A stretch of 64,000 nt of DNA from Mizuhopecten yessoensis (lineage: Eukaryota). Each line of letters opens with the position of its first letter. Position 1 is the first letter of the stretch. The position numbers were made by a program, and so were the translations under genes. The stretch spans positions 12,438-76,437 of the forward strand of contig NW_018403780.1 in assembly GCF_002113885.1 (NCBI RefSeq), given 5' to 3'. Below, piece by piece: positions 7,408 through 37,400 of this stretch. Below the pieces are notes generated by a model. It had not been told where the DNA came from. It did no database searches and worked only from the letters and a program-made list of their open reading frames with translations.

Positions 7408-9186
7408 TATAGACAAAATCCTTATAGCACGTACAGTAACAAGTGAGTATTCACCGCTGTGACCTACCCATTCTGTGAAAAGTATTCACCACTGTGACCT
7501 GCCCACTCTGTGGAAAGTATTCACCACTGTAACCTGCCCACTCTGTGGAAAGTATTCCCCACTGTGACCTGCCCACTCTGTGGAAAGTATTCCCCACTGT
7601 GACCTGCCCACTCTGTGGAAAGTATTCCCCACTGTGACCTGCCCACTCTGTGGAAAGTATACACCACTGTGACCTGCCCACTCTGTGGTAAGTATTCACC
7701 ACTGTGAATAGACAAAATCCTTATAGCACGTACAGTAACAAGTGAGTATTCACCGCTGTGACCTACCCATTCTGTGAAAAGTATTCACCACTGTGCCCTG
7801 CCCACTCTGTGGAAAGTATTCACCACTGTGACCTCCCCACTCTGTGGAAAGTATTCACCACTGTGAACTGCCCACTCTGTGGAAAGTATTCACCACTGTG
7901 AACTGCCCACTCTGTGGAAAGTATTCACCACTGTGACCTCCCCACTCTGTGGAAAGTATTCACCACTGTGACCTCCCCACTCTGTGGAAAGTATTCACCA
8001 CTGTGACCTCCCCACTCTGTGGAAAGTATTCACCACTGTGACCTCCCCACTCTGTGGAAAGTATTCACCACTGTGACCTCCCCACTCTGTGGAAAGTATT
8101 CACCACTGTGACATGCCCACTCTGTGGTAAGTATTCACCACTGTGGCCTGCCCACTCTGTGGTAAGTATTCACCACTGTGAATAGACAAAATCCTTATAG
8201 CACGTACAGTAACAAGTGAGTATTCACCGCTGTGACCTACCCATTCTGTGAAAAGTATTCACCACTGTGCCCTGCCCACTCTGTGGAAAGTATTCACCAC
8301 CGTGACCTGCCCCCTCTGTGGAAAGTATTCACCACCGTGACCTGCCCGCTCTGTTGAAAGTATTCACCACTGTAACCTGCCCACTCTGTGGAAAGTATTC
8401 ACCACCGTGACCTGCCCGCTCTGTTGAAAGTAGTCACCACTGTAACCTGCCCTCTCTGTGGAAAGTATTCACCACCGTGACCTGCCCATTCTGTGGAAAG
8501 TATTCACCACTGTAACCTGCCCACTCTGTGGAAAGTATTCACCACCGTGACCTGCCCGCTCTGTTGAAAGTAGTCACCACTGTAACCTGCCCTCTCTGTG
8601 GAAAGTATTCACCACCGTGACCTGCCCCCTCTGTGGAAAGTATTCACCACTGTGACCTGCTCATTCTGTGGAAAGTATTCACCACTGTGACCTGCCCCCT
8701 CTGTGGAAAGTATTCACCACTGTGACCTGCTCATTCTGTGGAAAGTATTCACCACTGTGACCTGCTCATTCTGTGGAAAGTATTCACCACTGTGACCTGC
8801 CCATTCTGTGGAAAGTATTCACCAGTGTGACCTGCCCACTCTGTGGAAAGTATTCACCCCTGTGACCTGCCCAGTTTGTGGAAAGTATTCACCACTGTGT
8901 CCTGCCCACTCTGTGGAAAGTATTCACCACTGAGACCTGCCCACTCTGTGGTAAGTATTCACCACTGTGGCCTGCCCACTCTGTGGTAAGTATTCACCAC
9001 TGTGGCCTGCCCACTCTGTGGTAAGTATTCACCACTTTGACCTGCCCACTCTGTGGAAAGTATTCACCCCTGTGACCTGCCCAGTTTGTGGAAAGTATTC
9101 ACCACTGTGTCCTGCCCACTCTGTGGAAAGTATTCACCACTTCTGTGAAAAGTATTCACCACTGTGACCTGCCCACTCTGTGGAAA
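7408..9186. repeat. 35-bp minisatellite (TTCACCACTGTGACCTGCCCACTCTGTGGAAAGTA)n with higher-order blocks
   Basis: 35-bp period (for example GCCCACTC at 7501 and 7536). A leader ATAGACAAAATCCTTATAGCACGTACAGTAACAAGTGAG recurs at ~7408, ~7708 and ~8182. Confidence 0.95.
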
Positions 9187-9924
9187 GGCCGCGTGTTCGT
9201 GTCCTCCGGATTACATTTATGTCTGTGAAAACATAGTAAAGGAGATTATTGTACAAACCGTCCTGCTCGTGCGTGTGCGTCATTTTAACCGAGGTCAATT
9301 GCAAACGACTACATGTACATTACTCCTCGCTGTGTCGTAACGAACGTTGAATAACGTGGGGTTTTATTGATGACACATACTACTGTTATTGAGATTCAAA
9401 TATTCAACAACTTGTTTGATCATTGATTTGTATTTCCAATGTTTGCTTTGATTCTGCTCATCAAAACATTCTGTTGAAAATAATAGATATTATATGCAAT
9501 ACTGTAGTGGTGTGTGCAATTGTCAGGCCAATGTAATAGTGAAAATTACATTCGAAAAAAACAATCAATTTTACAACGACCTCTGAACACTGGAAGATGG
9601 AATTTATTCTGGAATGATTTGCATGCAATACTAGTTAAATTTGTATTTCTGTTGAAGCCAAAACTTGTTAAGGATGGCCGTTAAGTGTTTTACTGATACC
9701 TTCCTAATTTTACTGTTTTTCTACCTGTTCGTTGACGTTTATTGCCACTAAGTAATCCTAAACGGACTAGATGGCAGTAATTTATTCTTTGGTTGGCTCT
9801 TTGTATTGCCTTAAGTATTTTTTTATATTTTTGCATCTCTACTTCGTATTGGTAGTGACAATTTCGTTATATCATTATTTCCTCTATCTGGCCAATCCGG
9901 TTTACTAAAAGTAATATGGCAAAG

Positions 9925-10050
9925 AGTGGTCTGGTGGTGAAGCACTCACCTTTCACCAAGCTGGCAGAGGCTCGATTCCTTGATTGGACGTGAATGGTAT
10001 GTGATCTCTTGCCCAATCACGTGGGATTGTTATCGGTGGTCCGCCGTCCG
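9925..10050 (+). mobile_element. Degenerate tRNA-derived SINE (same family as 33526-33690)
   Basis: A-box-like TGGTCTGGTGG, then TCACCAAG, B-box-like GGCTCGATTCC, and TTGCCCAATCACGTGGG matching TTGCCCGACCACGCGGG of the 33.5 kb copy. Confidence 0.6.
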
Positions 10051-19900: not shown

Positions 19901-20619
19901 AGCTTTACGAGTCAATAAACCCAAATTTTAAGATTTTTTCAATATATTCAATTTCAGAAATATTTTCCAAATTATAGTTAACAGTTGAAGATATATAATT
20001 GTATTGGTTATTGATCGTTAATGATGAATTTAATTATTTTTGAAAGAACATATCGTAGACATTTAAGCTAACTTGTTTTTAAGTGAAACACGCCCTTCAC
20101 AATCCTATACAAATTAATATGAATAAATGATAACACTGCACATGATAATACACCCAGTTCAAAACATATTGAAATATATTATGAAATAGTTCTACGAAAA
20201 CTTGGATTGCTTTCAAATATACAATGTGCATACAATTCATCTATAATAAGGTACCCTCTGAAATACGTCTATACTTACCAACAAAGATTAAACCACCTGT
20301 GGTCATAGCTATAATACTTCCATGCGCCTGTCGACAAGGACAGACCAAACCTACGGATTAGCCATGGAAGGGATCAACTTAATAATATGCCAGTTCAAAG
20401 GGATTAATCTCTAACTGTGTTTCCAATGCTTATATATAACGGCTGAAATTCAAAATGGTGGCAAAGTTTATATGACAATATTTGATCTCTATAACAATCG
20501 ATTTAAGTGATATGAAGATGTAATTTCTGAACTAAGATATATGATTGTCGTACTCTAAGGAAATATTTACCAAACTGAAATAACAAGTTGTTGTGTGGAG
20601 TCGACTCTAACGATCAGCC

Positions 20620-20637
20620 ATGGTTAAGATCAAGCAT
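20620..20637 (+). CDS. CAPN5: Putative upstream first coding exon of the calpain-5-like gene (MVKIKH)
   Basis: Strong start context CAGCCATGG and a perfect GTAAGT donor at 20638. A phase-0 join to the acceptor at 25324 adds FLSNI in frame before ATG 25340. Confidence 0.55.
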
Positions 20638-21228
20638 GTAAGTATTTATGTTGATTGTTACAATGTTTATAGAAACCATTACAAGTACAATGGAGACGTG
20701 CAATATAAATAGTTCGCTAAATCAAACAAGGACATTTTGACGGATTGTAATAATTTTACATTAAGCTACTTTGCTGTAAACTTGTTTCTCTTTATATTCC
20801 ACGACATTTAACGAGGAAATTGTCTTCATTTAAAGTATTGTATGACCTCCATATATAATAGGTTTGTGTGGAAACCTATGGTGATGCTCCTGTTGAAACC
20901 AATTAGTATTTATTTGATTAATTGTATGGATGTTATGCTGTAATATTTGCACCGAGATGGGGACTTACATTTAAGTCCAAACTCAACAATATAAATCAAG
21001 TAAATTGCCTTTATATGATGTTCATCTGTCTTTCTTACAATATATGATTTCATATATCACATATTGACAACGTGTAAAAATATTTAACGTTCATAAGCCA
21101 GTATAAATTAAACACTAAATTAGCAATTTACTGTGTTTTATTAAATACATGTGTACCTATTCAAAGTTTCGCAGCAGCATTCTTCGTTTAAGTATATTTA
21201 CTTACTTGATTCTGCATCCAAGCACATG

Positions 21229-21414
21229 TTCCGTCTTTGCGTATTGCAGAGTTATCTTCTCTTGGGAGCAGGTATTGATTGTTACGTCACTTGTTTGTGA
21301 GAGTAAAGTCATCAACTTTTGAGAAAACGACGTAATTTTCTCACCCAAACCAATGACGTAACAATCAATACCTGCTCCAAAGAGAAGATAACTCTGCAAT
21401 ACGCAAAGACGGAA
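21229..21414. mobile_element. Fold-back MITE with ~60-bp near-perfect inverted arms
   Basis: TTCCGTCTTTGCGTATTGCAGAGTTATCTTCTCTTGGGAGCAGGTATTGATTGTTACGTCA versus its reverse complement ending at 21414. A one-arm copy lies at ~38270-38349. Confidence 0.85.
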
Positions 21415-21619
21415 TTAGGCGACTATAGTGCAATACCTGTAGAACATTTTGGTACGTCATCTGTGTAATGGACACCTAGAAACTATAATTCCATTTGAAT
21501 AATTTCCATTTTCTTTCCTTTATCTCCCTTTTTCGACACCAACGCTTAATTAAAACGTGTTTTGTTAAACAAAAAATATAACATTTAAGATAAGACAAGA
21601 AGCTTGAGGTCTTTTTTTG

Positions 21620-22017
21620 AATAGATGATATAGCGACCAGTGGAACTCTTCAAATAGGAAGGGGTTAAACTGTACTCGCTGGGGCAACGGACAACATGGC
21701 AGCGCCAAAACATTCAGATACGAATTTCCACGAACTTCCATGTAATGAATTGGGTGATATTTTAAAGTCAAAAGGTATCACCTACTCCAAATAAGACAAT
21801 TGGGGAGCTAGTACACCTATGGTAGCAAGCAGACATGTTAAATTGGCCAGATATTGAAAAACGGGCCAAAGCTAAAGCGTCACAGCTGTGACGGACCGTC
21901 AGCGGCGTACAGAGTATCGTGTGTTACCTTTGAGTAAATGAAACGTCAGAAGGCTTGTTTTGGACAAACAATTTGATTGGAATGTCATCACTAAATGCAT
22001 TTGATATGACCTCTATT
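21620..22017 (+). mobile_element. Internally deleted DNA-transposon relic with SAP-like N-terminal coding remnant
   Basis: Short terminal inverted ends AATAGA...TCTATT. ATG 21696 gives MAAPKHSDTNFHELPCNELGDILKSKGITYS, then by frameshift NKTIGELVHLW*QADMLNWP, a SAP-like pattern. Confidence 0.4.
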
Positions 22018-22079
22018 CTTGTGAATTATTTTTATTGGTTCAATACAGTGAGGTGGGGCATATTGTTTACACATGGCAG

Positions 22080-23390
22080 GGGTCTCACTAATTTGCGCCA
22101 TAGGAGATTTAGCGCCATAGGTGCGCCATAGGAGTTTTTGCACGCCATAGCAAAATTTAAGTGTTTTATCCACGAAATATTTCGATTTTTCCATTGGTAT
22201 ACTCATTAAACATGTTTTGGTAAAGTATCATTTAACAAAAAATGTGTACTTTGTTAGAAAATCGATCTTGATTACGAAGCACTTTACACTAATTTGCGCC
22301 ATACGTGTTTTTTAACGCCATAGCTAAATATAAGAATTATTTTCAGCAAATAACTGTGTTTTTCCTTTGGTGTATGCAATGAACAGGTTGTGGTAAAGTT
22401 TCATTCTTAAAAAATGTTTATTTTGTTAGGAAATCGACAAAATATTTCATCGCGATTCAGAAGTCAATTTCAAGGGAAGTAACTCGTACATTTGCAAAAT
22501 ACGCCATATGTCTAGTGAATAAGACATGACTAGTACTTGAGAGGAAAAAAGAGAATTTATTTATGCATGTAAACATGGAATAAATTACAATTTAAAATAG
22601 TTAGACATGAACAAATTTTATATTAATTTTAGAATTTATTTAGAAAAGTTTATTTATTACATCTACTTAAATATCAATCACAGAAACATTAAAGAGAATA
22701 ACACATTTTTAAATATTATTAATATACATTAATGTTATTTAATGAACAGATTGATTAATAACATATGTACAACACAATTATAATCTTTATTGAATTCACC
22801 AATTATACATCTAAATCTACACAGAACATTGGAATACAGAACACATCCACAGTCTATCTAATAGTCACACACTTAAAGTACACAGGTTTGAAAACATTGT
22901 CTCTATTACCACTGGCTGCAATGTTCCCATCGTCAAGGCGGTACAGTTTCATCCCAGCTCGTAGGTACTTCGGTACATCTAGGGTAATGATGTCCTAGTA
23001 CTTGTCTCTAAATACTATTTGGGTTAGGCACTCTCTTCGTTTGTGGGTTTTTAACTCTACTGTATTTTTAAATCTTAAATCTATATCTCCATTTTCTTCA
23101 ATATAGAATCTCAAATAAAAAAAAACTCCAATTGATAGCTGCAATTCCTTCATTATAATCTTTTCATACATTTCATAACTTTCTTATTTATAATTGATTA
23201 ATGATGACCAACTGATGATGTTTTACCCCCGTATCCTCGCATTCTCTCGCGAGACTTGTGCATTTTCCAGCAAGAACTCTTCGAAGGGGAGTAACTCGTG
23301 GATGGTCGCGATAACACCTATTCTCTTCCATTATTGACACCAATCGCCAAAATTAGATTTTAGCGTGTTAAAACCCCGCCATACAGACCC
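22080..23390. mobile_element. Non-autonomous DNA-transposon-like element with repeated CGCCATA motifs
   Basis: GGGTCT (22080) and AGACCC (23385-23390) form short inverted ends. CGCCATA recurs at least 7 times, mostly in the left ~430 bp. AAGGG(A/G)AGTAACTCGT occurs at ~22472 and ~23285. Boundaries are uncertain. Confidence 0.5.
22854..23111 (-). pseudogene. Tpt1/KptA (RNA 2'-phosphotransferase, TRPT1-like) C-terminal relic
   Basis: Single frame RFYIEENGDIDLRFKNTVELKTHKRRECLTQIVFRDKY*DIITLDVPKYLRAGMKLYRLDDGNIAASGNRDNVFKPVYFKCVTIR*. The last 46 aa fit the eukaryotic Tpt1 C-terminal pattern (I.IDv.kal..Gi.Fy.s.NgViL..Gn..g.i.P.yF..v). AATAAA follows on the minus strand near 22790. Confidence 0.6.
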
Positions 23391-25339
23391 AAAAATTGTG
23401 TTTGTGGGGCTACCGTGTTTTGCTTATATACTACGATATTAAATAAACAAACAGCGCTTGTTGCCCTACTTCCTACCGAACAGTTGATGCTGTTAAACAT
23501 TTTGCTATGAGGAAGTGAAATCACTTTACTTTGACCTAGATTTAACAGACATGTGTCGTCGATGACGCCGAAGACGCTTAATCCATATTTTGCGTTAGTT
23601 GCTTGACGCTGATGTCGAATAGGGCTTTGCTAATACATCAGTATCCTTCGGGATACTTTCATGAATGCAGTACACTGTAACAGAAACAACCTCGTTATAT
23701 CGATATGATAAACACACCTCGTGTATACGACACCAGGTAAAGCCATCAGCACCTCACAATGGTAAGGATCGGTAAATATAGGTTTTAAGTGATTGAGTTT
23801 GTGTCGGACACGCAATGTATTAAATCATCATTGGGTCTCAAAGGTGATGCAGATGTCTAAATCAATGAATGACATCATTGCTAGCTTGATGAAATAATTG
23901 CATAGTTTCGTTATAAAATCCTACTTTGTATGGTGACTTGCTGTTAATATATTTCCTCCATGCTCAACGAAATCGAACAAGGAAATTGTCTTAATTTGAT
24001 ACATTGTATGGCCTCCGTATACTATTTTTTGTGTGAAATCGTGTTCTAAACATATTTAACTTCATTTTCAATGTAAATTGAGGAAAGTATCTTGCATACG
24101 ACACCAGGTAAATGCCATCCACCAACAGATCCCAGTGATTAGGAGCGTTACACGTATACGGTCCTTAATTGATTGCTTCTGTGTCGGGCATTCAGTGTAA
24201 TCAAACAGCATTGGGTGGAAACGGTGCTGCGTATGTATACAACCAACTACCTACATCATTGCTAGCTAGATCAAACAAAATAGAAAAAGTCCATTGCACA
24301 GTTTCGTAATAGAACAAATTGGTAACCTGTCATTACGCAATTTTCTATATTTTTATTTTAAATATCTCTGATGCTTTATCTTTGGTATATTGATAACGAT
24401 AGGTTAGAAATGATACTGGCTATTTATGTATTTAAATAAAGAGTTCATTATCGGTGAGCTTGATACGAGCCTTTTTTTTATATTTTTGTCAAAAACGACA
24501 AGTCATAAGAAATCTTTAAGCGATATTTTGAAACAACACAACTTAAAGTGTATTTTTTAATTGCCTGAATAGATATTCGGAAGAACCGAATATTAAAGTC
24601 TACATGCGATCATTATCATGGGGCCAGGTTCGCCCTGTGCTAACTCAGGAAGCCACGTCCTCTTGGCGAGACCTATATCTCCGCATGACTTCCAATACGC
24701 TATAAAACTAAAGCAGATACAGAAAAGAAAGGAAATGAAAAGAAACTAGAGGCGTGTCGAAGCTGTATGAAGGCAATGTAGTAAGTTGGTCGTAAACGAT
24801 ATAGCGCCCTTATACCTGTGGTTAAATGTTTTCTGACCAGCGATAACCACCAAACATTCTCGTTGAGGGTTGACTGTTAAACATTCTCGTACGGATTTCA
24901 TACCTTCTCTTTTATGGGGGCGATAATAAGTATCCGCATCGTATAAAGCTAGCGAATACACAATTGCTAAGTACGATCTAACCTGAATCCAATTTACATG
25001 CAAATGTTATAATCAATCTCCTTCGTATAGATTCTGTTTGTTACCTTACAGCCATATATCAGATTGTGTATACTAACTATACTATATTCATCATATGGGT
25101 GATATTCCCACACGCTGAGTATCATAAATATTTCTGAAATAAGCTACAAATGCCTACATCCTTAATCGACTCTAGTCTTTCCAAAGAAATAAGCAGTAAA
25201 ATACAAATTTTTTTCATAGAAAGAAAATATAATATGTCAATCAAACCGAATTTCAATACATGTTTTTTCTATCGTATTATTATTATAAACCATTACGAAA
25301 ACAAAATATTTTCATTTATTGTAGTTCCTAAGCAACATC

Positions 25340-25492
25340 ATGCCGACTAACTACAGAGGTCAAAAGTATTCGTCGATCCGGAGCGAGCACGTTAAAGCCG
25401 GAACGCTGTTTGAGGACCCGGAATTCAAAATCAACAACAAATCACTATTCTTTAGTAAGATTGATCAAGATATCGAGTGGAAAAGACCCAGG
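25340..25492 (+). CDS. CAPN5: Calpain-5-like coding exon 1 (MPTNY...WKRPR)
   Basis: Acceptor AG 25323-25324, ATG 25340, donor GTAAGT 25493, phase 0. Confidence 0.92.
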
Positions 25493-28400
25493 GTAAGTCA
25501 CGTGAAATTGTGTCATAAAAACAAGAGATAGCGTTCTAAAAACAACACGGATTATTGTGTGATATAACTAGAATAAAACCTCAAAAATGTCGAAGTTTTC
25601 GGGACAAATAAAACTATTCGACTTATCCGACGGTTCGACTCTACCGGGTTGTAAAGTGTAGCGCACTCGTAAGACCCGAGATGTATTCCGTTAACTGTTA
25701 TAGTACTGAATACTTTCAGTAAATAAACGTGTAATCGTCAGGTTTCCTGCAGTAAAATAAAACCAAAGATTTTATAGCAGTTTAATGAATTACAATATTC
25801 TCTACTTGCAAATACCGCACAAAATATAAATGCAAAGTTCATGTCTCAGTAGATAGATTGAATTATTTCAAATGCTACAAACTGACAACAGCTAATGGGA
25901 ATTGATCAAATACCAAATTATCAGGAGAGGGTAGAGAACAGACCTGCAGTATACAACTGCATAATCGTAAGAGCGACCTATAAGGGATCATCTTCTGTGT
26001 TGACTGAGTTAGGGTCATTGTACACCACATATTGTATCTGCTGCACTACTGCAACACTGTGTGTCTTTTTTCTATGTCGTCTCTACTCTTCATCCAAATG
26101 TGTCTCATTCGGCATCCGTCTTCATTTGACCCGGGTTGTTTGAGGGCGTTAGGTCCCTAAAACTATATACATGATAAGAAAACAATAATACATAATGACA
26201 CTCTCAGATTTATTTTTGCTGTTCCAGGAGCTGTGTAAGGTACCTAAGCTGGTGGTCGAGGGGGTCAGTTGTGATGACCTCAACCAAGGGGAGTTGGGGA
26301 ACTCCTGGTTTGTCACCGCATGCGCCAGCCTCACTCTGGAAAAGAAACTGTTTGAACGGGTAACTGCTTAATTCGTGTTCGTTTGCTTTGTGCAATAATG
26401 AATCTCTTCTATTTTCGTTATTGCTGTCATTATATTTTCAGATATAACTTTAATTTGATTACCATGTTTACAATTATATTATAATTACTTTTATATCTTA
26501 TGCACTTTCCTGATCATCAAAATAACCAGTAGCAATACTTATAAATTTTATGTAAGGGGAATATGTTAATTTCATTAGTATCGCAAAGTATTTTTGTACA
26601 TTATGTTACTTAGAAACTATTTGTTACGACTAGATCATAGACTATTATACTATATAGTATGAAATTAACTCATTTTAAGTAACATGTTGTCCATGAGCTA
26701 CTACTATTAAAACAAATGCTTTAAGCTTCCTATGCTTCCTCGAAAACAACGATTAAAATTATACTCTTTATATGTGAAAGGTATGTAATAGTCAAATAAC
26801 GTTATTACATAATACCATATCAGAAGGAAGGATAAACAATATCAGAGTTATCCTTAATGTACCTAAGTGTACACATTTCGCTGCTTAATTAGGAATTATT
26901 GATATTCCGAGTACAATGGTATGAATAATCAAAACCCTGACCTTACTTCTGTACATCTATCAAACAATACGTTTCTCCTTTATACAAAATAATGTATACG
27001 TAACACACACAGTCGTTATTTTGGATATCTAATATATATTTTTTCTCAAGACATCATGTCTAATATAAGAATTAAGGACTTTTGTAACGGTTAAAACGGT
27101 GTTATATGGACCTGATGGAGTAATATTGACCTCGCACTGCCTTCTCGGTCGATATCGCTCCATCAGGTCTATATAACAACGTATTGACCTCGACAAAAGT
27201 CCATAATTTAGAAGTATTATACAGCTTGTATACCGTCTATACCTCTATGAAATTGATTGCTCTAGTGACAAATAGATAGTCCCTATGGATTGAATGAGTC
27301 TGATTCAAAGTCATTAATCATAAATTAATTCACTGGATTTATATATTTGTATGGAAAATATATAGTTTAACTCATCAGCATTTCCATATCCAGTTCCTTA
27401 AATACTTTTTTCAAAGTGCTGGTTTAATAAAAATAAGCTTTCGTTGTATAGCTGCTTCTAAAGAACAATTACAAAACTGTCACTGTTGATCTGCAATTAC
27501 TATATTTTTGCAATGGGCCCTCATAAACATCAGCAAAGCACTTAAGTGTCATTACAGGGTGGTTTCTGTCATCTGTTAGGTTTATTCACCAGACTTCCTG
27601 TAGTCTAACTTGGTCAAAATTAATTGAGGCTGTTAATGTTCCTGATTACAGCAACAGAGACAAATTACACTCCATCTCTCCCTATAAACCTAGTAACAAA
27701 GCTAACATTAAGACTCTGGCTACACCATCTTTACCTAATATAAAAATTGTTTATAACACAAGCTATATAAAACTTTATACACTGGAACATGGCTTTACTC
27801 TCAAATTTGACATGTCCTCACAAATATTTTGTTAGAGAAAAATAATGATTTAGCATGGCATGGTTATTTGGCGAGTGGTGTATGTAGGTCACTTAATAAA
27901 CAGGCACACGAAGGTATGGGACATCAATGAGAGAGCTGCAGATCACGGGACATATTAAACAGCAGCTTATTCCCAGCACGTCTGCTATATCATATAATAT
28001 CATATAATATAAAACAAATCTTTTATTTATTATAGTATATAATATGAAGGCAGGGGCTGTCCCAAGCGCCTGCTCTCAGGATTGGAACCTGTGATAGTTT
28101 GTTTTAATTTATTGATATATTACGTATTATAACTGTCTTAACAAACTTATGATATAATGTCTGTATATTTTTACAGTTAGATGATCGATCCCTGCTTTTA
28201 ACTATATGTTTTATAGTGTGTAACTACATACGTGTACGATGTAATTGTGATATAATTATGACACTTTTATAAACAAAATTGACTTGACTTAACTATATAT
28301 CATCTTATATGCATTTAATCTTCATTATTTCTACATAATATTTAGATTTTTTTTTTTTTTTTTATTTCATTTTTTATTCGAAGTAAGAACGTTGACATTG

Positions 28401-31400
28401 TATCAAAGATTTATTAACATGATAGCGTGTTAATATTAAGTTAGATGAAGCGATTAGGTACGGGATATCATTATTCAGATATCGTAGAATGCGCAAAAAC
28501 GTACAGGCTACATTAATATATGCAATACTATTAAATACATCCCAGATGACCTGACATTATATGCTATGAGATGCCACACTGATACACTGACGTGTGGGCT
28601 CCCGTAGATATATCCTTCCTATCACACGTTTGTTATAAAGGTTCAAACCCTGAATGACTTTTATTTAAAGGTCTCCATGCCGGATTAGTCGGCCGTGTAT
28701 TGCTTACAATCGATAACAGTACCTGTGGTATGGACATTGTGTATTTGACAGGTTGTATATTGAACAGGTGAAAACTCATTAACGTGTCCGCGTTAACATT
28801 CCTGTATTGGACCTTTCCGTATGGTTTAAATGTTTACCGATTTACCTGTGTCATTGGTGAAGTATTGCTTACTATAATGTTAGTCCATTCTATATAGATT
28901 GTATACGATCAGATAACACCAACGATTTATTTACACGTCAATAAATCTTACATTTAAAAATATGTAAACATTTTGAGGAAAATAATGTTAAATGTTAATA
29001 CTGAAAAGGTCAGATATAAAGTGCCAGCTTTATAATATAGTAAGAGTTACATGTGTTGAATGGAATATCTTATTTTTATTAGCACTTACATCCAACCCTG
29101 TTATCTATTCAGATATGCGATATAGGCTGAGAACATACTGAGGTATTTATTTCAACGATTATATTATGAATAAACGTAAGACTAGAATAAAGGTAAATAT
29201 TCCTGTACCTGTGTGTAATTTAGTACAAAGAAAAAATAACTGCAAATGGATATAATATATACGATATGTACTTTAAAATGTCTCACTTGGGTTCTGGGGT
29301 TGGTTTTGCGGGCAGGTTTTCTTGTTTTTTATACATATCTAGCTGGATGACTAAGCCAAGCAGCTGATGCTACCGTGAATGGGGAAAAGGCTTGTGTACA
29401 AGATAACTGATAGAAAAGAGCTTGATCTGGATTTGTAAATCTTTTCACATGGGGTTCACGAATTTTGAGGGTTTAGACTGTTGATCTTCAATTAATACAT
29501 TTTTGCAATGAGCCCACATAAACATCAGCAAAGCACTTAAGTGTCATTACAAGGTGGTTTCTGTCATCTGTTAGGTATATTCACCAGACTTCCTGTAGCA
29601 TAACCTGGTCCTGTTAATGTTCCTGATTACACCAACAAATACAAATTCCACTCCATCTCTCCCTATAAACCTAGTGACAAAGTTAGCAGTGAGACTCTGG
29701 CTACACCTTCTGTTAGCCCACAGGTATGTGACCGTTGGCCTCTTGTTTATATTGTTTTAAAGTTACAAGAAGGAGAAATGATAAAGGAGAGCAAAATTTT
29801 ACATAATTGGTTTTTTCTGTTTAATCACGTGTTTTCGGTGTTCGCCGCCAGGTGGTGCCTAATACGAAGGAGCAGGACTGGAATGAGCGGGAGGAGAAGA
29901 ACACGTATGGTGGTGTGTTCCACTTCGTGTTATGGCGGTACGGGGAGTGGATTGACGTCGTAGTGGACGATAGGCTGCCAACCAAGAACGGCAAGCTGGT
30001 GTTCTGTCACTCCAAGTCCCGCAACGAGTTCTGGTCCGCTCTACTGGAAAAGGCGTACGCCAAGTGAGTAGCAAAAACTGTCAAAAGAAATACATCCGTT
30101 TTAATAATGACTTAGTGCTTCTTATATATACAATCATAAATTATGCACCAGTTTTTGATAGAATTTTTCTCACCAAATTTTTAGTGTATATTCTTTATCT
30201 GATAATCCAGCGTTACGTAAACGCTATCACTACAGTGACATTTCAAGTACATAGATACTTATTGACAAAATACAATATAGCTACTGTTAACACAAAATTG
30301 TGACATGTTGCTTTTTTGATGATGTAAAGAAAATACATTTTAATACCAAAAACAATATTTGAAGATGAAATATATACAAAAATCAACTCTCTGTATAAAT
30401 ATATCAGAACTCAGGTGACCGTGACTGTAATATCTGTTATTTTGCTTCACATAATGAGACAAATTTAATACACGTAACCTTTAATCTAGACGATGTGCAA
30501 TGTAAACAATCAGATGACATATTTTTAAAATCAAATAAATGCTGATCGTTTAGTCTGGTGCAACAGTATACAACAATGAAATGAAAAAATCCAAGAAAAC
30601 CCCAATTATATTTTTAAACAATAAAATTACAGAGAAAGATCAACCGGTGTTAGTTTAAAATTAACCCCTTGTATTTTATATGTATCTTCCATTACGATTC
30701 CAGGTTATATGGGGATTACGAGTCCCTCAACACCGGACGGACGGCTGACGCACTGGTAGACTTTACCGGTGGGGTGGCGGAGAAGCTTGCAATGGCGAGA
30801 ATTAACATTGACGACAAGAACATAAAAAAGCAGTTGTTTCTCAAGCTGAAGGACGCAAGCGACAACAGAGCACTCATGAACTGCAATATAGATGTAATTA
30901 TCTATCATGTTCGTTCATTGTGACCATTATAAAAGTTCGTTAGTGATTTCATTTTCATCTCTTTCAAAGTTTTACATTTCATATTGTACAACATAGCTTT
31001 ACACATTCATGAAAACATTGAAAAGACCAAACTTACACTCATTCATATCTACACGCATACACAGGTGCATACCTATAATACTAGTACAAGAACAGTTCCA
31101 CATTGACGTACATGAATAATAACCATACACATAACATTACAAATAAAAACTTAAAGCCAATGAGAAACACATAACTATAGACAGGAAGTGTATTGTCAGT
31201 GAGGGTTTTAGTGTATATATTATTAAAATATTTACATTAGTCAAAAACATGAAGTGATCAAAATCTATGGTATCCATGATTTATAAAGAGATGTAAGGTA
31301 GAGAGAACGTTTCATCATAATCTGCATTGTAATAGGTTTAATAAGCGTGACAGACAATCAGTATTTTCCATGATACAGGTAAAAATCAAGTATTATCAAT

Positions 31401-34400
31401 TTTGCACAATTGCACAATGTATGGCTTAGTATGTAACTAAACATGTTATTATCAGTGTTGGCAGTGATATATTGAAGGGGATATGTTTGGCTGAATTGCC
31501 AAGTATCATATATCGTGAGAGTTTTGCCGCGTAAGGATCTGTGTCGCAATAATATCTCGTGAGTTAATATTTGTGCGAAGCTAAAAAAACTTTCTTGTAG
31601 CATTATCACATTTTCATTCACGATAATTTAAGGGAATAGATAGAGATAAGGATCATGAGAGTTTATAAAAGGTTGTTTGGGTGCGTGCGGCACTCTATTG
31701 ACCTGTATGACCTACATTTCTTTCCTCAGTGTCAGAGGACGGAGGTTGGCAAGGAGACCCCCCAGGGTTTGGTTCTGGGTCACGGTTACAACATCACAAA
31801 GGTGGCTGAGATTGTTATAGATAAGAAACTGCAGGGCGCGGTGGGGAGTCCTGTTCTCAATATGGTCCGAATGGCCAACCCCTGGGGAACCATGGAGTGG
31901 ACAGGCGCCTGGTCTGACGAGTAAGTCACAATAGTGTCTTTGATTTGGTCAACAAATTAGAGAATACCAAAGCGTCAGCAAACTTGTAATTCGAACTGAA
32001 TATTAATAATAGTAGGACAAAAGTTAACAAAGGAAAGATTAATATGGAGAGTCATGACTTTTTTCGAAAAAGTACAAGAAATATAAGACCAGGTGTTTCG
32101 GAAGAGTAGGTGTTTCCATACATTCAAAATCACTTTTTTAAAGCTACCTCATGCATATATATCTACCATGTGTGTGTTTATATAGATGTTGACAACTCGA
32201 ATCACATTTCCAACACACATGCTTAACGTTTTATTGTATATACTTGTCTAGAATAAATATGGACATTCACTGTAGTTCCAGGCTTTCTATCATAACCCTT
32301 TACCAGAGAGATATCGGTTAACAGTTATCGCTCTTATGTCACGTCCATATTTATTGTAGGAACATAGCAGATAGACATTTTATAGGATATGTTCAACTAT
32401 AGCAATACAAGTCATTATGACAATTCCTATCTCATCCCTTAAGGGAGGTAATCTTTACATACATATTCTAACATATTGTCATGGTGTTATGAACATGTTA
32501 ATTATTTTTTGCAGCGCTCCAGAATGGAACAAAATCAACCGATCTGAATGGCACAAACTTGGTTTGAAGTTTGAACAGGAAGGCGAATTTTGGTAAGGAT
32601 TATGATTAATGTTATGATTATGATATATATTTTTTTTCAAAAAAATATGGAAAGGCAAAGTCTTAAAAGAGCGTAGCTTTTGTTGATCTCTGATATTTAC
32701 TGATTCAGAATACTGCTTTAAGAATGAGATAAGATAAACTTTATTTAAAGTCGGCTAGTCGAGGAAGAACAATAAAACACAAGCTCTAATGAGATTAAGA
32801 CCGACATAACAATAGAGGAGATAGGGGCAAGTCCGTTCTGGGAAGTATGGCAGCACGTCCGTTTTTTAACCGAACGAGCCCCGCCATGGGTAAGTTTAGA
32901 CAGGCATTCGGGTAAGTTCGACCCCCATTGGAATCATCTTAATTATGACGTCATAAAGCATGCAACGTCAGATTTAACCGCCAATTTTACGACTGTTTAT
33001 GTGTTGCATGGGCCGAACTTGCCACGGTATCATTGGCCAAACCTGTCCGGGCCCAAATTGATATTTCGATAAATTCTTATCGTACAGCAATATGGAAGTG
33101 AGTGCTTGGCTTGGCTTTCCTGTATAGCATTTGAAGCTGTCAGTGTGTTACACGTTTGACCGTAAAAAAAGTAGAAATTCCGAATATAGAAAGTTCGCAT
33201 AACTAGAAGCGAGATTATGATTTTCTTTTTAACCCCTCAAATGTAATTTTCTTATGTTTAGTAATTTTACATTAGAGTTTTTCTCGCCATTTTTTCGTGT
33301 AAATGTCCAGCCAACTAAGCTGCTAAGATCCTTAAAGTTAGAAATATAAGCTCATAAACAAAAATATCAGGGGTGGCCGAACTTGCCCGGTCTCTCGTAT
33401 GTAATTGTTTCGTATCATTGATGATTGGTAAAAATGTATTCACAATATAATTTTTGCATCAATGACGCCATTTTCTTCAAGTCAAAGCTAAAGTAGAATT
33501 TGTTCTTGTGCGTAGAGTATATGATGGGTCGGGTGGCGCAGTGGATAGCGCGCTCGTCATCACCAAGATAGCCGGATTCAATCCCGGTCACTTGCCCGAC
33601 CACGCGGGTTTTCTCCGGATACTCCAGCTTCCTCCCACATTAAGAACTGAATCCTCTGCGTGCTTCGGTCAGGGCAAAAAAAGAATTAATTAATATATTG
33701 TTAAAAAAACTGTTTGGTAATTGCTATAGAAAAAGTGCATATTTTATATTTGACGATAAGTCTAAGTAAATGTATAGAGATGTTAGTTAAAAAAGAAAAA
33801 AGAAAAAAAAGAAAACATTGTAATACTTTAATGTAACTGAGATTGTCTTTATAACGATATGTAGTCTCAATTCCTGTTCTATTCTGAAACACCGGATTGA
33901 ATTTCAAATTTTGTAACTGGTACTGAGGTGTGACAGGTAGTGATGCCAAATAAAATTAAACAGTTTCTGTCTGTAACTAGTTATAAATCGGCACGCGTTG
34001 TGTAATACGTTGCTGAAAAAAGGGCGATGAACTCGGGTTGGTTGTCTGGAAAATTATTGTTGATTGGGCATAAATGCATTATCAATTGTTTCTTTTATGA
34101 TGCATAAATAATCAAGCAATAAAACATGAGAATTGTTTTCACTATATGTAGATGTTCAGTGCATCTAGACACAATTGTCTTTGTTTCAAGGATACACTTC
34201 CAGTTTCCCCACTGGACGTCTACTTCTGGACGAAAAAAAATAAAAGCAATGTGTAGCAAGGGGAAGCAACTCTGTTTACGCACGCATATGTTACCATTGA
34301 AGAGCTTCGCTCTTATTAAAGACACCCGTTTCGTCTCGTAGAAGATCTATTATGATATAGCAAGTCAATTTAAAACACTATTTGCTTATCGATTAATGTT

Positions 34401-37400
34401 TTTCTATTGCAGGATGAACTTTGACGACTTTGTTGTAAATTTTACAAATGTTGACATATGTCACTTTGTAAACACTGCCATATTCAGCCTAAAGAAATCC
34501 TGGAATGAATGTGTGTTTCACAGCGAATGGACATATTCCGGTAGAAACGGTGGGAACGACTACAATAGCCCCACCTTCCTTAGTAACCCACAGGTATCGG
34601 CATAGTTACATACACGTCGTTCGACATTTATTGACACTTTTACCAATAGCAGGTGTACTTAACCGGTTAAAAAACAATACTGTTGGGTGGGTAGCAGATG
34701 TCACAAAAATGTTGCCGTATTAATTATTGTTTTTGACTGTTTACGTCATTATTATTTTATTTTACGAAACAATTAAAGTTGCTACAATCAGTACACAGTG
34801 TTATAAGATCAAAAAACGCCTGAACAGCCAGTTACAATTTTAAGTAAGTATTTTTTTAAATGTTTGATTCCTAAAGCAACATCTTTATTTTATCTGTCTA
34901 CAGTACGTATTTGATGTTGCCGGTATGAGTGACAACGTTATGTTCTCACTAGAACAACAGGACATCGTTCATGGTCAAGAATCCGGCCGCAAACTCAACC
35001 ACATCGGCTTCCAGGTGATGAAGGTAAGATTCTCTTGAATGGTATTGAAGTAAAGGGTCGTAAAATATCAGCAACAACGTCACAATATCTCACTTCCCGC
35101 GTTATACAATTATTAACATTTTCATAACCTCTTGTAAATACACGTGACAGCAATAGACAATGATATATCAAAGTGGACATTTTGAAGACAATTTCGATTG
35201 TTTTGTTTTCAGTTTTATCATGCTGCATGTCCACGCTAAATGTTTTTGAATACCAAATTTCCATTTTGACCTCCCCACCTTATGTGTTAAATACATGAGT
35301 TATCATGAAATGAAGCACCTATTTGAAAATGTTTTTTATATTTATAATTTTATATAATTTATAATGTAATGGTATATTTTTAATTTCATATAATTTATAA
35401 TGTAATGGTATATTTATAATTTTATATAACTTATAACGTGTATTTTTAATTTTATATAATTGATAATGTAATGGTATATTTTTAATTTTATATAATTTAT
35501 AATGTAATGGTATATTTTTAATTTTATATAATTTATAATGTAATGGCATATTTATAATTTTATATAATTTATAATGTAATGGTATATTTTTAATTTTATA
35601 TAATTTATAATGTAATGGTATATTTTTAATTTTATATAATTTATAATGTAATGGTATATTTTTTTATTTGTCTCAATTGAATGCTAAAACATTTATATCG
35701 GAATACACAAATATATCATAAATGACAGCTGAATGTCTGTGTTAGATATATCATAAATAATCGCTGCATGTCTGTGTTAGATATATCAGAAGAAATTTAT
35801 ATTTCTTTAAAAGTTCTATTCAGAAAACCGGTGTATTGACACGATATCTAGATTTCCTGCAAAAGAAAAGTGTGCAAACAAATTGAAATGTGTCTTTCTA
35901 ATATGAAACATAATGTGTTCTTTATTGTTGTTGATTTTGTTTTGATTTTATTATTACAGGTAGAAGAAAATCGAAAATTCAGAGTCCATATACCTGGAGA
36001 AAAAATGTACTGTTCGGAATACATCGCCGATCGTAGTATATATGGCATAATAAACTTAAAGAAAGGGCGATACGTTGTGTTACCCACGACCACAGACTCT
36101 AAAGAGTTAGGTCCATTTATGCTGCGGATGTACACTGGCAGCAAAGCCTCAGGAAGGTAGGTTATGTCCCTTTTCAAAATGTATCTTAATTTCTTAATAT
36201 TTAGGCTGTTTAACGACATATCAAATTAAGCAACTGGCTGAAACTGGCTAATACAAAACACCTCTGATATGAAAAGCACCAAAAAAATACTATGCAAGTT
36301 TACTTAGTTTACTAATATTAACTGTTTGGTAAAAATGCCTCGCTTTTATTGCGTATTTAGATTTTGATATATTGCTTCTTATAGAAAGCTTACCTTTCAT
36401 AATGCTTACAGCATCTCGTCAACATTTTGGTTGAAGTATATTGCGCATAATCACTACATTCAATTCTTCGTGGAGGAGTCCCATTATATGAAATAAAATG
36501 TAAATTATACCGTATATCAGAATTGTATTCGCAAGCACAAGTATTTTCGCTTTATTCAATAAATGATTAATTGGCACAATAATAGAACGCGAATGTTTGG
36601 CCACATTCGACAATCGACGCAAAAAAGTCCAAAGCTGAAAATTTAATCTTGAACAAGTTTGCGAATTTGGTGTCACACATAAAACCCCTGATATATGGTG
36701 TTCTATAAACGGTACCTACGCATTGATATGATACCCTCTGCCATTTTCTACTAACATCACATTTGATTAAATGCATTCGTGTAGTGGCAAGTTTGCATCA
36801 CCAAGGTATGTATACTAACATAACATCAGTATGATTCATTGTATTGCCATTGTATTGATATTGTATTGACATAGTATTGACATTGTATTGATATTGTATT
36901 GATATTGTATTGCATGTTAGCATCTCTCGTGCTGTTTAGTAAGAGTGGCTTGTTTATGTTGCTATATGTTGTGTTGTTTGAAGTAGTTTGAAGTGCCTAT
37001 TATCGTGATATTTTTTTTATATTTTGATAAATTTAGCCACAGGAAAACATACTGTATACCGGGATATTTTCGTTATAAAAGCGTCTTCTTCTTAAACAAC
37101 GTAAACCTAGATAAAATGTCACGTTCTCACATGGAAAATTTGGGAAGTGACAACAATACCATAAGGCGCTCTAATGAGCCTAATCAGAACATCGACTTTC
37201 ATCTCACATAAAGAAATAGCATATTTCCCTGCGAAATCCTGATGGGGACCATAAAACGTGTCCATAATCTTCATCAACTTTGTGTGTTTATCTTCGTCTG
37301 TTAGTGGTCGACATATATCACGGAAGTCAGACGATGATATTAATTGAATTGTTCAACATTTCAATTCTCCTTTAAATTCTATAATTTCCACCTTTAAATA

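What the first reader, a model, noticed from the sequence alone, without database searches (positions are those of the whole stretch)
26285..26311. Intact calpain-5 gene with the catalytic Cys replaced by Ser: a natural pseudo-protease
Seen: the active-site exon reads QGELGNSWF (TCC at 26303-26305, Ser77) where calpains have QG.LG(N/D)CW. Gln71, His247, Asn279 and the NPWG Trp are intact, and all 12 exons are open with good splice sites. Known: Cys-to-Ser is the standard laboratory inactivating mutation for calpains, and eutherian CAPN6 is a non-proteolytic CAPN5 paralogue with Lys at this site. Inference: this is an independently evolved invertebrate calpain-6 analogue (scaffold, substrate trap or dominant-negative). 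Less likely, it is a Ser-His-Asn enzyme. TCC differs from TGC by one base, so error or polymorphism must be excluded.
Basis: partly seen in the sequence, partly recalled or inferred. Interest (0 to 1): 0.8.

Follow-up and report, generated by a model that had tools for sequence, protein, structure and literature searches.

The report
Scallop calpain-5 copy without catalytic cysteine
The Yesso scallop gene really does carry serine where calpain proteases need their catalytic cysteine, but it is one member of an ancient, widespread group of mollusc, worm and brachiopod calpain-5 copies that kept the protease fold and let the catalytic residues drift, so it is almost certainly a non-cutting "dead" calpain, a known kind of protein.

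Summary
Exon 2 (26228-26359, + strand) reads QGELGNSWF, and TCC at 26303-26305 aligns with the catalytic Cys of human calpain-5.

- **Not an error:** two independent DNA runs, each with its own intron SNPs, show no change at the codon. Raw RNA reads show the exon 2-3 and 3-4 splices.
- **Identity:** the 630-aa model is 630/630 identical to RefSeq "calpain-5-like" of Mizuhopecten yessoensis, so the gene is already annotated.
- **Relatives:** three other scallops have Ala (GCC) here. Oysters and mussels have Thr; other relatives have Ser, Pro, Gly, Val or Cys.
- **Phylogeny:** a 79-protein tree shows three lophotrochozoan CAPN5/TRA-3 clades. All changes at the nucleophile (at least 13, of which at least 7 are Cys/non-Cys) fall in the window's clade. 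None occurs in the 51 other proteins.
- **Other copies:** M. yessoensis also has two paralogues with an intact Cys-His-Asn triad.
- **Selection:** among scallops dN/dS is 0.03-0.05, lowest in the protease core. The relaxed positions include Gln71, residue 77, His247, Arg278 and Gly282, while the Ca2+-ligand positions are kept.

Verdict: a conserved non-proteolytic calpain, convergent with eutherian CAPN6, and not a Ser-His-Asn enzyme. I found no paper describing this clade.

The parts
20620..20637 (+). Alternative 5' coding exon (MVKIKH) used by RefSeq isoforms X1 and X2. It has a GT donor at 20638 and splices to an acceptor at 25325.
   Evidence: the peptide of P0282 located in the window; isoform alignment.
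25340..25492 (+). Coding exon 1, from ATG at 25340 (MPTNYRGQ...WKRPR). In the longer isoforms the exon starts at 25325 (FLSNI).
   Evidence: weak Pfam Peptidase_C2 start.
26228..26359 (+). Exon 2, the active-site exon. Gln71 is at 26285-26287. Ser77 (TCC) at 26303-26305 takes the place of the nucleophile Cys.
   Evidence: Reads confirm TCC and the exon 2-3 splice.
29852..30063 (+). Exon 3 (CysPc core, includes [14 protein letters not shown] with the Ca2+ site-1 Glu154).
   Evidence: RNA joints on both sides.
30704..30893 (+). Exon 4 (CysPc).
   Evidence: RNA joint 30063->30704.
31730..31920 (+). Exon 5. His247 is at 31781-31783 (GHGY). Asn279 is at 31877-31879 and Trp281 at 31883-31885 (ANPW).
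32515..32592 (+). Exon 6 (end of CysPc, EGEFW Ca2+ site-2 region).
34413..34593 (+). Exon 7 (end of the Peptidase_C2 match and start of the C2-like domain III).
34904..35023 (+). Exon 8 (Calpain_III).
35960..36156 (+). Exon 9 (Calpain_III).
36785..36805 (+). Alternative 21-nt micro-exon (SGKFASP) in the linker between domain III and the C2 domain, used by isoforms X1 and X3.
   Evidence: AG acceptor, GT donor, reading phase kept.
39071..39192 (+). Exon 10 (linker and start of the C2 domain).
39683..39819 (+). Exon 11 (C2 domain).
40830..41009 (+). Exon 12 (end of the C2 domain, with the stop codon at 41007-41009).

Best explanation
The locus is the Mizuhopecten yessoensis gene annotated 'calpain-5-like' (XP_021359144/155/164). 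It is a CAPN5/TRA-3-type calpain with the domain order CysPc, C2-like domain III, C2. It belongs to an old lophotrochozoan paralogue clade, called clade III here, whose function does not depend on the thiol nucleophile.

Shown: the gene is intact, spliced, expressed and under strong purifying selection. The protease-core domain is the most constrained part. Relaxation is concentrated on the catalytic machinery: oxyanion-hole Gln71, nucleophile 77, base His247, and Arg278 and Gly282 around the catalytic Asn. Sister scallops carry Ala at position 77.

Inferred: the protein still folds as a calpain core and still binds Ca2+, because the positions I map to the core's Ca2+ ligands (Asp68, Glu154, Glu285, Asp292) are kept. 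It probably still reaches membranes through its C2 domain. It would then act as a non-cutting binder or scaffold, either holding calpain-type partners or substrates without cleaving them or competing with the two catalytic CAPN5 paralogues of the same genome. This is how eutherian CAPN6 works, and how human CAPN5 works in its triad-independent scaffold role. Ser77 itself has no special role. It is one of several small residues tolerated at a site that is no longer catalytic.
For: - Identity: 630/630 to three M. yessoensis RefSeq isoforms.
- Architecture: Peptidase_C2 1.8e-106, Calpain_III 1.4e-22, C2 4.1e-09. The best solved relative is the human CAPN5 core, E 3e-99.
- The codon is real and the gene is expressed. 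The five expressed SNPs are all synonymous.
- Codons at the site: Pecten, Argopecten and Ylistrum GCC (Ala), window TCC; oyster ACG, two metagenome-derived relatives TCC and ACC, Mactra TGT.
- Selection: NG86 dN/dS among four scallops is 0.025-0.047 overall and 0.011-0.027 for CysPc.
- Phylogeny: clade III has SH-aLRT 100 in two trees and follows the species phylogeny. All of the at least 13 nucleophile changes (at least 7 of them Cys/non-Cys) lie inside it, and none lies in the 51 other CAPN5-type proteins.
- Site scan: only 11 of 630 positions are invariant in the 51 catalytic proteins but variable in clade III, and they include 71, 77, 247, 278 and 282. Mean column entropy of CysPc is no higher in clade III (1.1 bits) than in the catalytic proteins (1.2 bits). 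The Ca2+-ligand positions are kept in 25-28 of 28.
- Catalytic copies in the same genome: P0421 and P0423, both Cys-His-Asn.
- Precedents: Cys-to-Ser abolishes autolysis of an Aplysia calpain (PMC5650170). CAPN6 acts non-proteolytically through microtubule binding (PMC7521557). A CAPN5 C81A/H252A/N284A mutant still supports its scaffold role (PMC6053247).
Against: - No biochemical test exists for any clade III protein.
- In bivalves His247, Asn279 and Trp281 are retained, which could mean residual chemistry.
- Some clade III members (Owenia, Lineus, Liolophura, Sinanodonta, Mactra) keep a full Cys-His-Asn triad and may still cut, so the clade may not be uniformly inactive.
- dS among the scallops is saturated (1.0-2.3), so the dN/dS values are rough.
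- Partners, tissue and the scaffold or competitor role are inferred by analogy only.
- The mapping of Ca2+ ligands rests on residue offsets from rat calpain-2 numbering (PMC4631099) and on my own knowledge of the core structures, not on a structure of this protein.
Confidence: 0.85

Rival explanations
1. Ser77 is a working nucleophile: the protein is a Ser-His-Asn hydrolase that swapped thiol for hydroxyl chemistry.
For: Gln71, His247, Asn279 and Trp281 are all intact in the scallop protein. Ser and Thr, both hydroxyl residues, are the commonest replacements in the clade: 15 of 28 rows.
Against: The three closest orthologues have Ala at this codon and are under the same strong constraint. Gly, Val and Pro also occur at the site, and in gastropods the His is replaced as well by Gln, Lys, Leu or Phe. 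Cys-to-Ser calpain mutants are inactive (PMC5650170). C129S calpain-3 cores are used as inactive forms in solved structures (one search shows such entries; their use as inactive forms is my own knowledge).
Confidence: 0.04
2. Assembly or sequencing error, or a rare allele: the real codon is TGC.
For: TCC and TGC differ by one base. The window itself is a single assembly.
Against: Two independent DNA runs from other studies carry TCC on contigs that differ from the window at nearby intron SNPs, and RNA reads show no alternative letter. The RefSeq proteins have Ser. Related scallops have Ala, not Cys.
Confidence: 0.01
3. A decaying pseudogene: after duplication the copy lost its catalytic residue and is drifting.
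For: The nucleophile is lost, and two catalytic paralogues in the same genome could cover the function.
Against: The 630-codon reading frame is open and every splice site is canonical. Spliced transcripts exist. dN/dS is 0.03-0.05 across scallops with saturated dS. Orthologues are kept across at least four phyla, with a gene tree that follows the species tree.
Confidence: 0.02
4. It is still a cysteine protease that uses another cysteine. Clade III is enriched for Cys66 and Cys147, and Cys83 lies six residues after position 77.
For: Cys66 is present in 21 of 28 clade III proteins, against Ala or Ser in the catalytic CAPN5s. Cys147 is present in 24 of 28 and Cys83 in 27 of 28.
Against: None of these is invariant, and Cys83 is equally common in the catalytic calpains. 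The oxyanion-hole Gln and the His also drift in the clade, which would not be expected if catalysis were kept. By offset from the calpain-1 core, residue 66 lies in the Ca2+ site-1 loop and not in the cleft (my own knowledge, not tested here).
Confidence: 0.03

Closest known systems
Eutherian calpain-6 (CAPN6, 'calpamodulin')
   Same: A CAPN5-type paralogue with the architecture CysPc, domain III, C2. It lacks the nucleophile Cys and is retained as a functional non-proteolytic protein. As in clade III, non-eutherian CAPN6 (chicken, crocodile, gar) still has Cys-His-Asn, so catalytic residues were lost inside an already separate paralogue.
   Different: It comes from an independent duplication: vertebrate CAPN6 groups with vertebrate CAPN5, and clade III groups with a lophotrochozoan CAPN5 clade. 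Microtubule and GEF-H1 binding are untested for the scallop protein.
Human calpain-5 / C. elegans TRA-3 (catalytic CAPN5 subfamily)
   Same: Same domain order. It is the best solved-structure match (6p3q, E 3e-99), and the Ca2+-ligand positions are conserved. CAPN5 also has a documented scaffold role that does not need the triad (PMC6053247).
   Different: CAPN5 and TRA-3 keep Cys-His-Asn. The scallop protein has Ser77 and carries the clade-wide shifts GHAY to GHGY, RNPWG to ANPWG and Glu236 to Gly.
Other 'dead' calpains: Drosophila CalpC, Rhodnius CalpA/B2 and CalpA/B4, C. elegans clp-3, androglobin
   Same: Calpain homologues with substituted triad residues that are kept by selection and have shown or suspected non-proteolytic roles (PMC11387712; PMC4631099).
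   Different: These are classical (PEF-type) or otherwise unrelated calpain subfamilies, and usually more than one triad residue is lost. Clade III is of the TRA-3/CAPN5 type and, in bivalves, has lost only the nucleophile.
Aplysia AplTra1 and AplTra2 (Hastings et al. 2017, PMC5650170)
   Same: Two C2-domain 'Tra' calpains are reported in a gastropod. This fits the several lophotrochozoan CAPN5 paralogue clades seen here.
   Different: The passages I read say nothing about catalytic residues of the Tra members. I could not establish which clade each Aplysia gene belongs to.

Membership tests
Calpain family (MEROPS C2 / Pfam Peptidase_C2) | A CysPc protease-core domain recognisable by sequence | tested here: met
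   Peptidase_C2 1.8e-106 over residues 24-336 of P0280, which is identical to the model.
Calpain family (MEROPS C2 / Pfam Peptidase_C2) | Catalytic triad Cys-His-Asn with the oxyanion-hole Gln (needed to count as a peptidase and not as a non-peptidase homologue) | tested here: not met
   Ser77 stands in place of Cys. Gln71, His247 and Asn279 are present. By the criterion used in PMC4631099 it is therefore a non-peptidase homologue.
CAPN5 / TRA-3 subfamily | Domain order CysPc, C2-like domain III, C-terminal C2 domain, with no PEF domain | tested here: met
   Pfam Peptidase_C2, Calpain_III and C2, and nothing else.
CAPN5 / TRA-3 subfamily | Placement in the tree with CAPN5-type proteins of other phyla | tested here: met
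   The window protein lies inside a starred lophotrochozoan clade that is sister to a catalytic lophotrochozoan CAPN5 clade, with arthropod, ambulacrarian and vertebrate CAPN5/6 outside. No classical calpains were included as an outgroup, so the subfamily boundary itself was not tested.
Vertebrate CAPN6 (orthology) | Descent from the vertebrate CAPN5/CAPN6 duplication | tested here: not met
   Vertebrate CAPN6 sequences group with vertebrate CAPN5 (SH-aLRT 100), apart from all protostome sequences.
Pseudoenzyme (functional non-catalytic homologue) | A catalytic residue is lost but the gene is expressed and under purifying selection | tested here: met
   Spliced RNA reads; dN/dS 0.025-0.047; synonymous-only expressed SNPs; orthologues across phyla.
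Pseudoenzyme (functional non-catalytic homologue) | Measured absence of catalytic activity | not testable with these tools
   This needs recombinant protein and protease assays.

The most novel reading that the evidence does not exclude
Clade III is a lophotrochozoan-wide, probably pre-radiation, CAPN5-derived Ca2+-responsive adaptor whose essential job never needed proteolysis. The nucleophile has therefore toggled neutrally among Cys, Ser, Thr, Ala, Gly, Val and Pro at least 13 times. Some lineages, for example Mactra, which is nested among Ser/Thr/Ala/Pro heterodonts, may have regained a complete Cys-His-Asn triad. That would make the clade a natural series of on/off calpains for separating scaffold functions from protease functions of CAPN5-type proteins.
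Probability: 0.3. Interest if true: 0.6.

Novelty: new member of a known kind. Interest (0 to 1): 0.42.

Why it matters
Catalytically dead calpains are known (CAPN6, CalpC, insect and nematode examples). A single scallop gene with Ser for Cys is therefore not surprising, and the gene is already in RefSeq as "calpain-5-like".

The follow-up adds context. The gene represents a whole paralogue clade across molluscs, annelids, nemerteans and a brachiopod. In this clade the catalytic residues are relaxed almost selectively, while the protease core stays as conserved as in the active enzymes.

This matters in three ways:
- It is a convergent parallel to mammalian CAPN6.
- It warns against reading "calpain-5" annotations or expression changes in bivalves and gastropods as protease activity.
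- It offers natural variants (Cys, Ser, Thr, Ala) for asking what CAPN5-type proteins do apart from cutting, which is still poorly understood even for human CAPN5.

Tried and rejected
1. **Word search with exon 2 alone.** It can only return proteins of 24-77 aa. It still gave eight exon-sized fragments showing Thr, Ser, Pro or Cys at the site, which was the first sign of a variable clade. It could not name organisms.
2. **The one allowed all-library HMMER search, with the 44-aa exon.** It returned mostly fragments. It was useful mainly for supplying P0021 (Solemya, full length) as a legal full-length query.
3. **Metagenome-derived loci L001-L003.** These are informative (Ser with His; Thr with Gln in place of His; Cys with His), but the organisms are unknown. 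L002 holds duplicated exon copies, which I did not resolve.
4. **The look-up of encoding contigs for Dreissena P0159 and Haliotis P0170.** Neither is on record, so the Ser codons of those lineages (TCN or AGY) remain unknown.
5. **Whether Ser77 derives from Ala.** I rejected this as not decidable. If Mizuhopecten lies outside the other three scallops (my own knowledge of scallop phylogeny) and the outgroups have Thr, then Thr to Ser to Ala, Thr to Ala to Ser, and two independent changes all cost two steps.
6. **Literature searches.** They found no description of this clade. The library is limited to open-access papers, so absence is weak evidence.
7. **Not done.** No typed or joined spliced model was sent to any search tool. 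Exons were searched by reference, and full-length searches used database protein ids (P0021, P0200, P0280). The joined model was built only inside scripts, from /data/window.fa, for local alignment, trees and dN/dS. No structure prediction was run, because sequence identity to the solved CAPN5 core already fixes the fold.

Full report
**1. The observation**

Window 26228-26359 (+) is an exon bounded by AG and GT. It translates to [44 protein letters not shown], with TCC at 26303-26305.

- Against solved structures the best match is the human calpain-5 core (6p3q), and the Ser lies opposite the Cys of GNCWF.
- Pfam places exons 1-6 in Peptidase_C2 and exons 7-9 in Calpain_III.
- A 12-exon model with GT..AG ends on every intron gives 630 codons without an internal stop.

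**2. Is the codon real?**

One read-laying run was allowed.

- Two DNA runs from other studies (X14, X10) each have a 1513-bp contig over 25617-27129. Each differs from the window at its own intron SNPs, and neither differs at 26303-26305.
- Raw RNA reads (X23) give the spliced joints exon 2 to exon 3 (3 reads) and exon 3 to exon 4 (9 reads), with no other letter at the codon.
- The five variants seen in RNA within exons 3-4 are all synonymous.

Sequencing error is excluded and the gene is transcribed and spliced. RNA depth is low, and contigs cannot exclude a rare allele.

**3. Which gene and which organism**

Full-length searches used database ids returned by the tools. The joined model was built only inside scripts for local comparisons.

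- The model is 630/630 identical to three RefSeq isoforms of "calpain-5-like [Mizuhopecten yessoensis]": XP_021359144, XP_021359155 and XP_021359164. The window is therefore Yesso scallop DNA and the gene is already annotated.
- The isoforms add a 5' coding exon at 20620-20637 and a 21-nt micro-exon at 36785-36805.
- The full protein has Peptidase_C2, Calpain_III and C2 domains. Its core matches human CAPN5 at E 3e-99.

**4. Relatives**

- Exon-sized fragments from the word search already showed Thr, Ser, Pro or Cys at the site.
- The best 150 hits of the all-library search had Cys at the site 112 times, Thr 15 times, Ser 3 times, and Pro, Arg, Lys, Asn, Gln or Met in the rest.
- Full-length relatives show the following at position 77:

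| Group | Residue at position 77 | Other changes |
|---|---|---|
| Scallops Pecten, Argopecten, Ylistrum | Ala | |
| Oysters, pearl oyster, mussels | Thr | |
| Heterodont bivalves | Ser, Thr, Ala, Pro; Cys in Mactra | |
| Gastropods | Thr, Ser, Gly or Val | usually His replaced by Gln, Lys, Leu or Phe |
| Lingula | Val | His replaced by Tyr |
| Tubulanus | Gly | His replaced by Arg, Asn replaced by Tyr |
| Owenia, Lineus, Liolophura, Sinanodonta | Cys | full Cys-His-Asn triad kept |

- Genomic codons: GCC in the three other scallops against TCC here. Elsewhere I found ACG, ACC, TCC, TGC and TGT.
- M. yessoensis has two further CAPN5-type genes with intact Cys-His-Asn: XP_021355119 and XP_021349775.

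**5. Phylogeny**

- Two trees were built: 53 rows with a site-heterogeneous model and 79 rows with LG+G4.
- Both place the window protein in a clade with SH-aLRT 100. The clade contains brachiopod, annelid, nemertean, chiton, gastropod and bivalve sequences roughly in species order.
- In the 79-row tree it is sister (99) to an all-Cys lophotrochozoan clade that holds the two other scallop genes, and a third all-Cys lophotrochozoan clade lies outside.
- Vertebrate CAPN6 groups with vertebrate CAPN5.
- On the 79-row tree the nucleophile position needs at least 13 changes, at least 7 of them between Cys and non-Cys. All of them are inside this clade, and none is among the 51 other proteins.
- These are quick searches with SH-aLRT support only. 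The root is placed on the vertebrates by choice.

**6. Selection**

- Codon alignments of the four scallop genes were rebuilt exon by exon from the fetched loci, with all splice sites conserved and no indels.
- They give NG86 dN/dS of 0.025-0.047. The CysPc domain is lowest, at 0.011-0.027.
- dS is saturated (1.0-2.3). These figures are therefore rough, but they are far from neutrality.
- A column scan shows that only 11 of 630 positions are invariant in the 51 catalytic proteins yet variable in the clade. They include Gln71, residue 77, His247, Arg278 and Gly282.
- Neighbouring columns (GN_WFVTAC) are almost frozen.
- Mean entropy of the CysPc domain is no higher than in the catalytic proteins.
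- The positions that correspond to the core's Ca2+ ligands are kept in 25-28 of 28 sequences. The ligand list is rat calpain-2 Asp96, Glu175, Glu292 and Asp299, from PMC4631099. I mapped them by offset within conserved blocks.

**7. Interpretation**

Shown: this is a functional, expressed gene whose conserved role cannot depend on a nucleophile at position 77, because sister species carry Ala under the same constraint.

Inferred: it is a Ca2+-responsive, possibly membrane-targeted, non-cutting calpain. It would act by binding, as a scaffold, a substrate holder or a competitor of the catalytic paralogues. Precedents are:
- CAPN6 (PMC7521557);
- the triad-independent scaffold role of human CAPN5 (PMC6053247);
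- dead insect calpains with developmental roles (PMC11387712).

The Ser-His-Asn enzyme idea is very unlikely. Besides the Ala orthologues, Cys-to-Ser abolished autolysis in an Aplysia calpain (PMC5650170). Whether Ser77 arose from Ala or from Thr, or preceded Ala, cannot be decided from four scallops.

**8. Novelty**

- Dead calpains are an established kind of protein.
- The gene is annotated, but only as "calpain-5-like".
- Five literature searches found no description of this lophotrochozoan clade or of its selective loss of catalytic residues.
- The Aplysia calpain survey lists two Tra calpains without comment on their triads.
- MEROPS-style surveys count hundreds of non-peptidase calpain homologues in bulk.
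- I therefore rate this as a new member of a known kind, of moderate interest.

Noticed in passing
window 30376-30422 (intron 3), also 27974-28355 and 27019-27209: Very high-copy short repeats lie inside the introns. Summed contig depth reaches about 20,000-27,000 at 30266-30456, against about 11-13 for the flanking single-copy DNA. Many loose ends continue into a palindromic ...AAGGCCCATGGGCCTCTTGTT... sequence. The element is also present in RNA reads. It is probably a MITE- or SINE-like element and is not part of the gene's coding sequence.
   Followed up: partly
window 20620-20637 and 36785-36805: RefSeq isoforms use an upstream 18-nt coding exon (MVKIKH) and a 21-nt micro-exon (SGKFASP) in the linker between domain III and the C2 domain. 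The micro-exon is also present in the Pecten and Ylistrum proteins, which suggests conserved alternative splicing of the linker.
   Followed up: partly
L002 822-974 and 1402-1503; 5974-6111 and 6211-6297: In a metagenome-derived relative (Thr at the nucleophile, Gln in place of His), exon 1 and the active-site exon each occur twice within a few hundred bases. P0009 and P0011 from the library likewise show tandemly repeated copies of the active-site exon peptide. This could be exon duplication or an assembly artefact. It was not resolved.
   Followed up: no
window 26270-26272 (Cys66) and 30004-30006 (Cys147): Two cysteines are enriched in clade III relative to the catalytic CAPN5s. Cys66 is present in 21 of 28, against Ala or Ser in the catalytic proteins. 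Cys147 is present in 24 of 28, against a mix of Val, Ile, Cys and Thr. Their meaning is unknown.
   Followed up: no
By my gene model this lies inside the long intron between the alternative 5' coding exon (20620-20637) and exon 1 (25325/25340). I did not examine it.
   Followed up: no
window 8001-10000: G+C content is 0.45 here, against about 0.32-0.38 in the rest of the window. I did not examine it.
   Followed up: no
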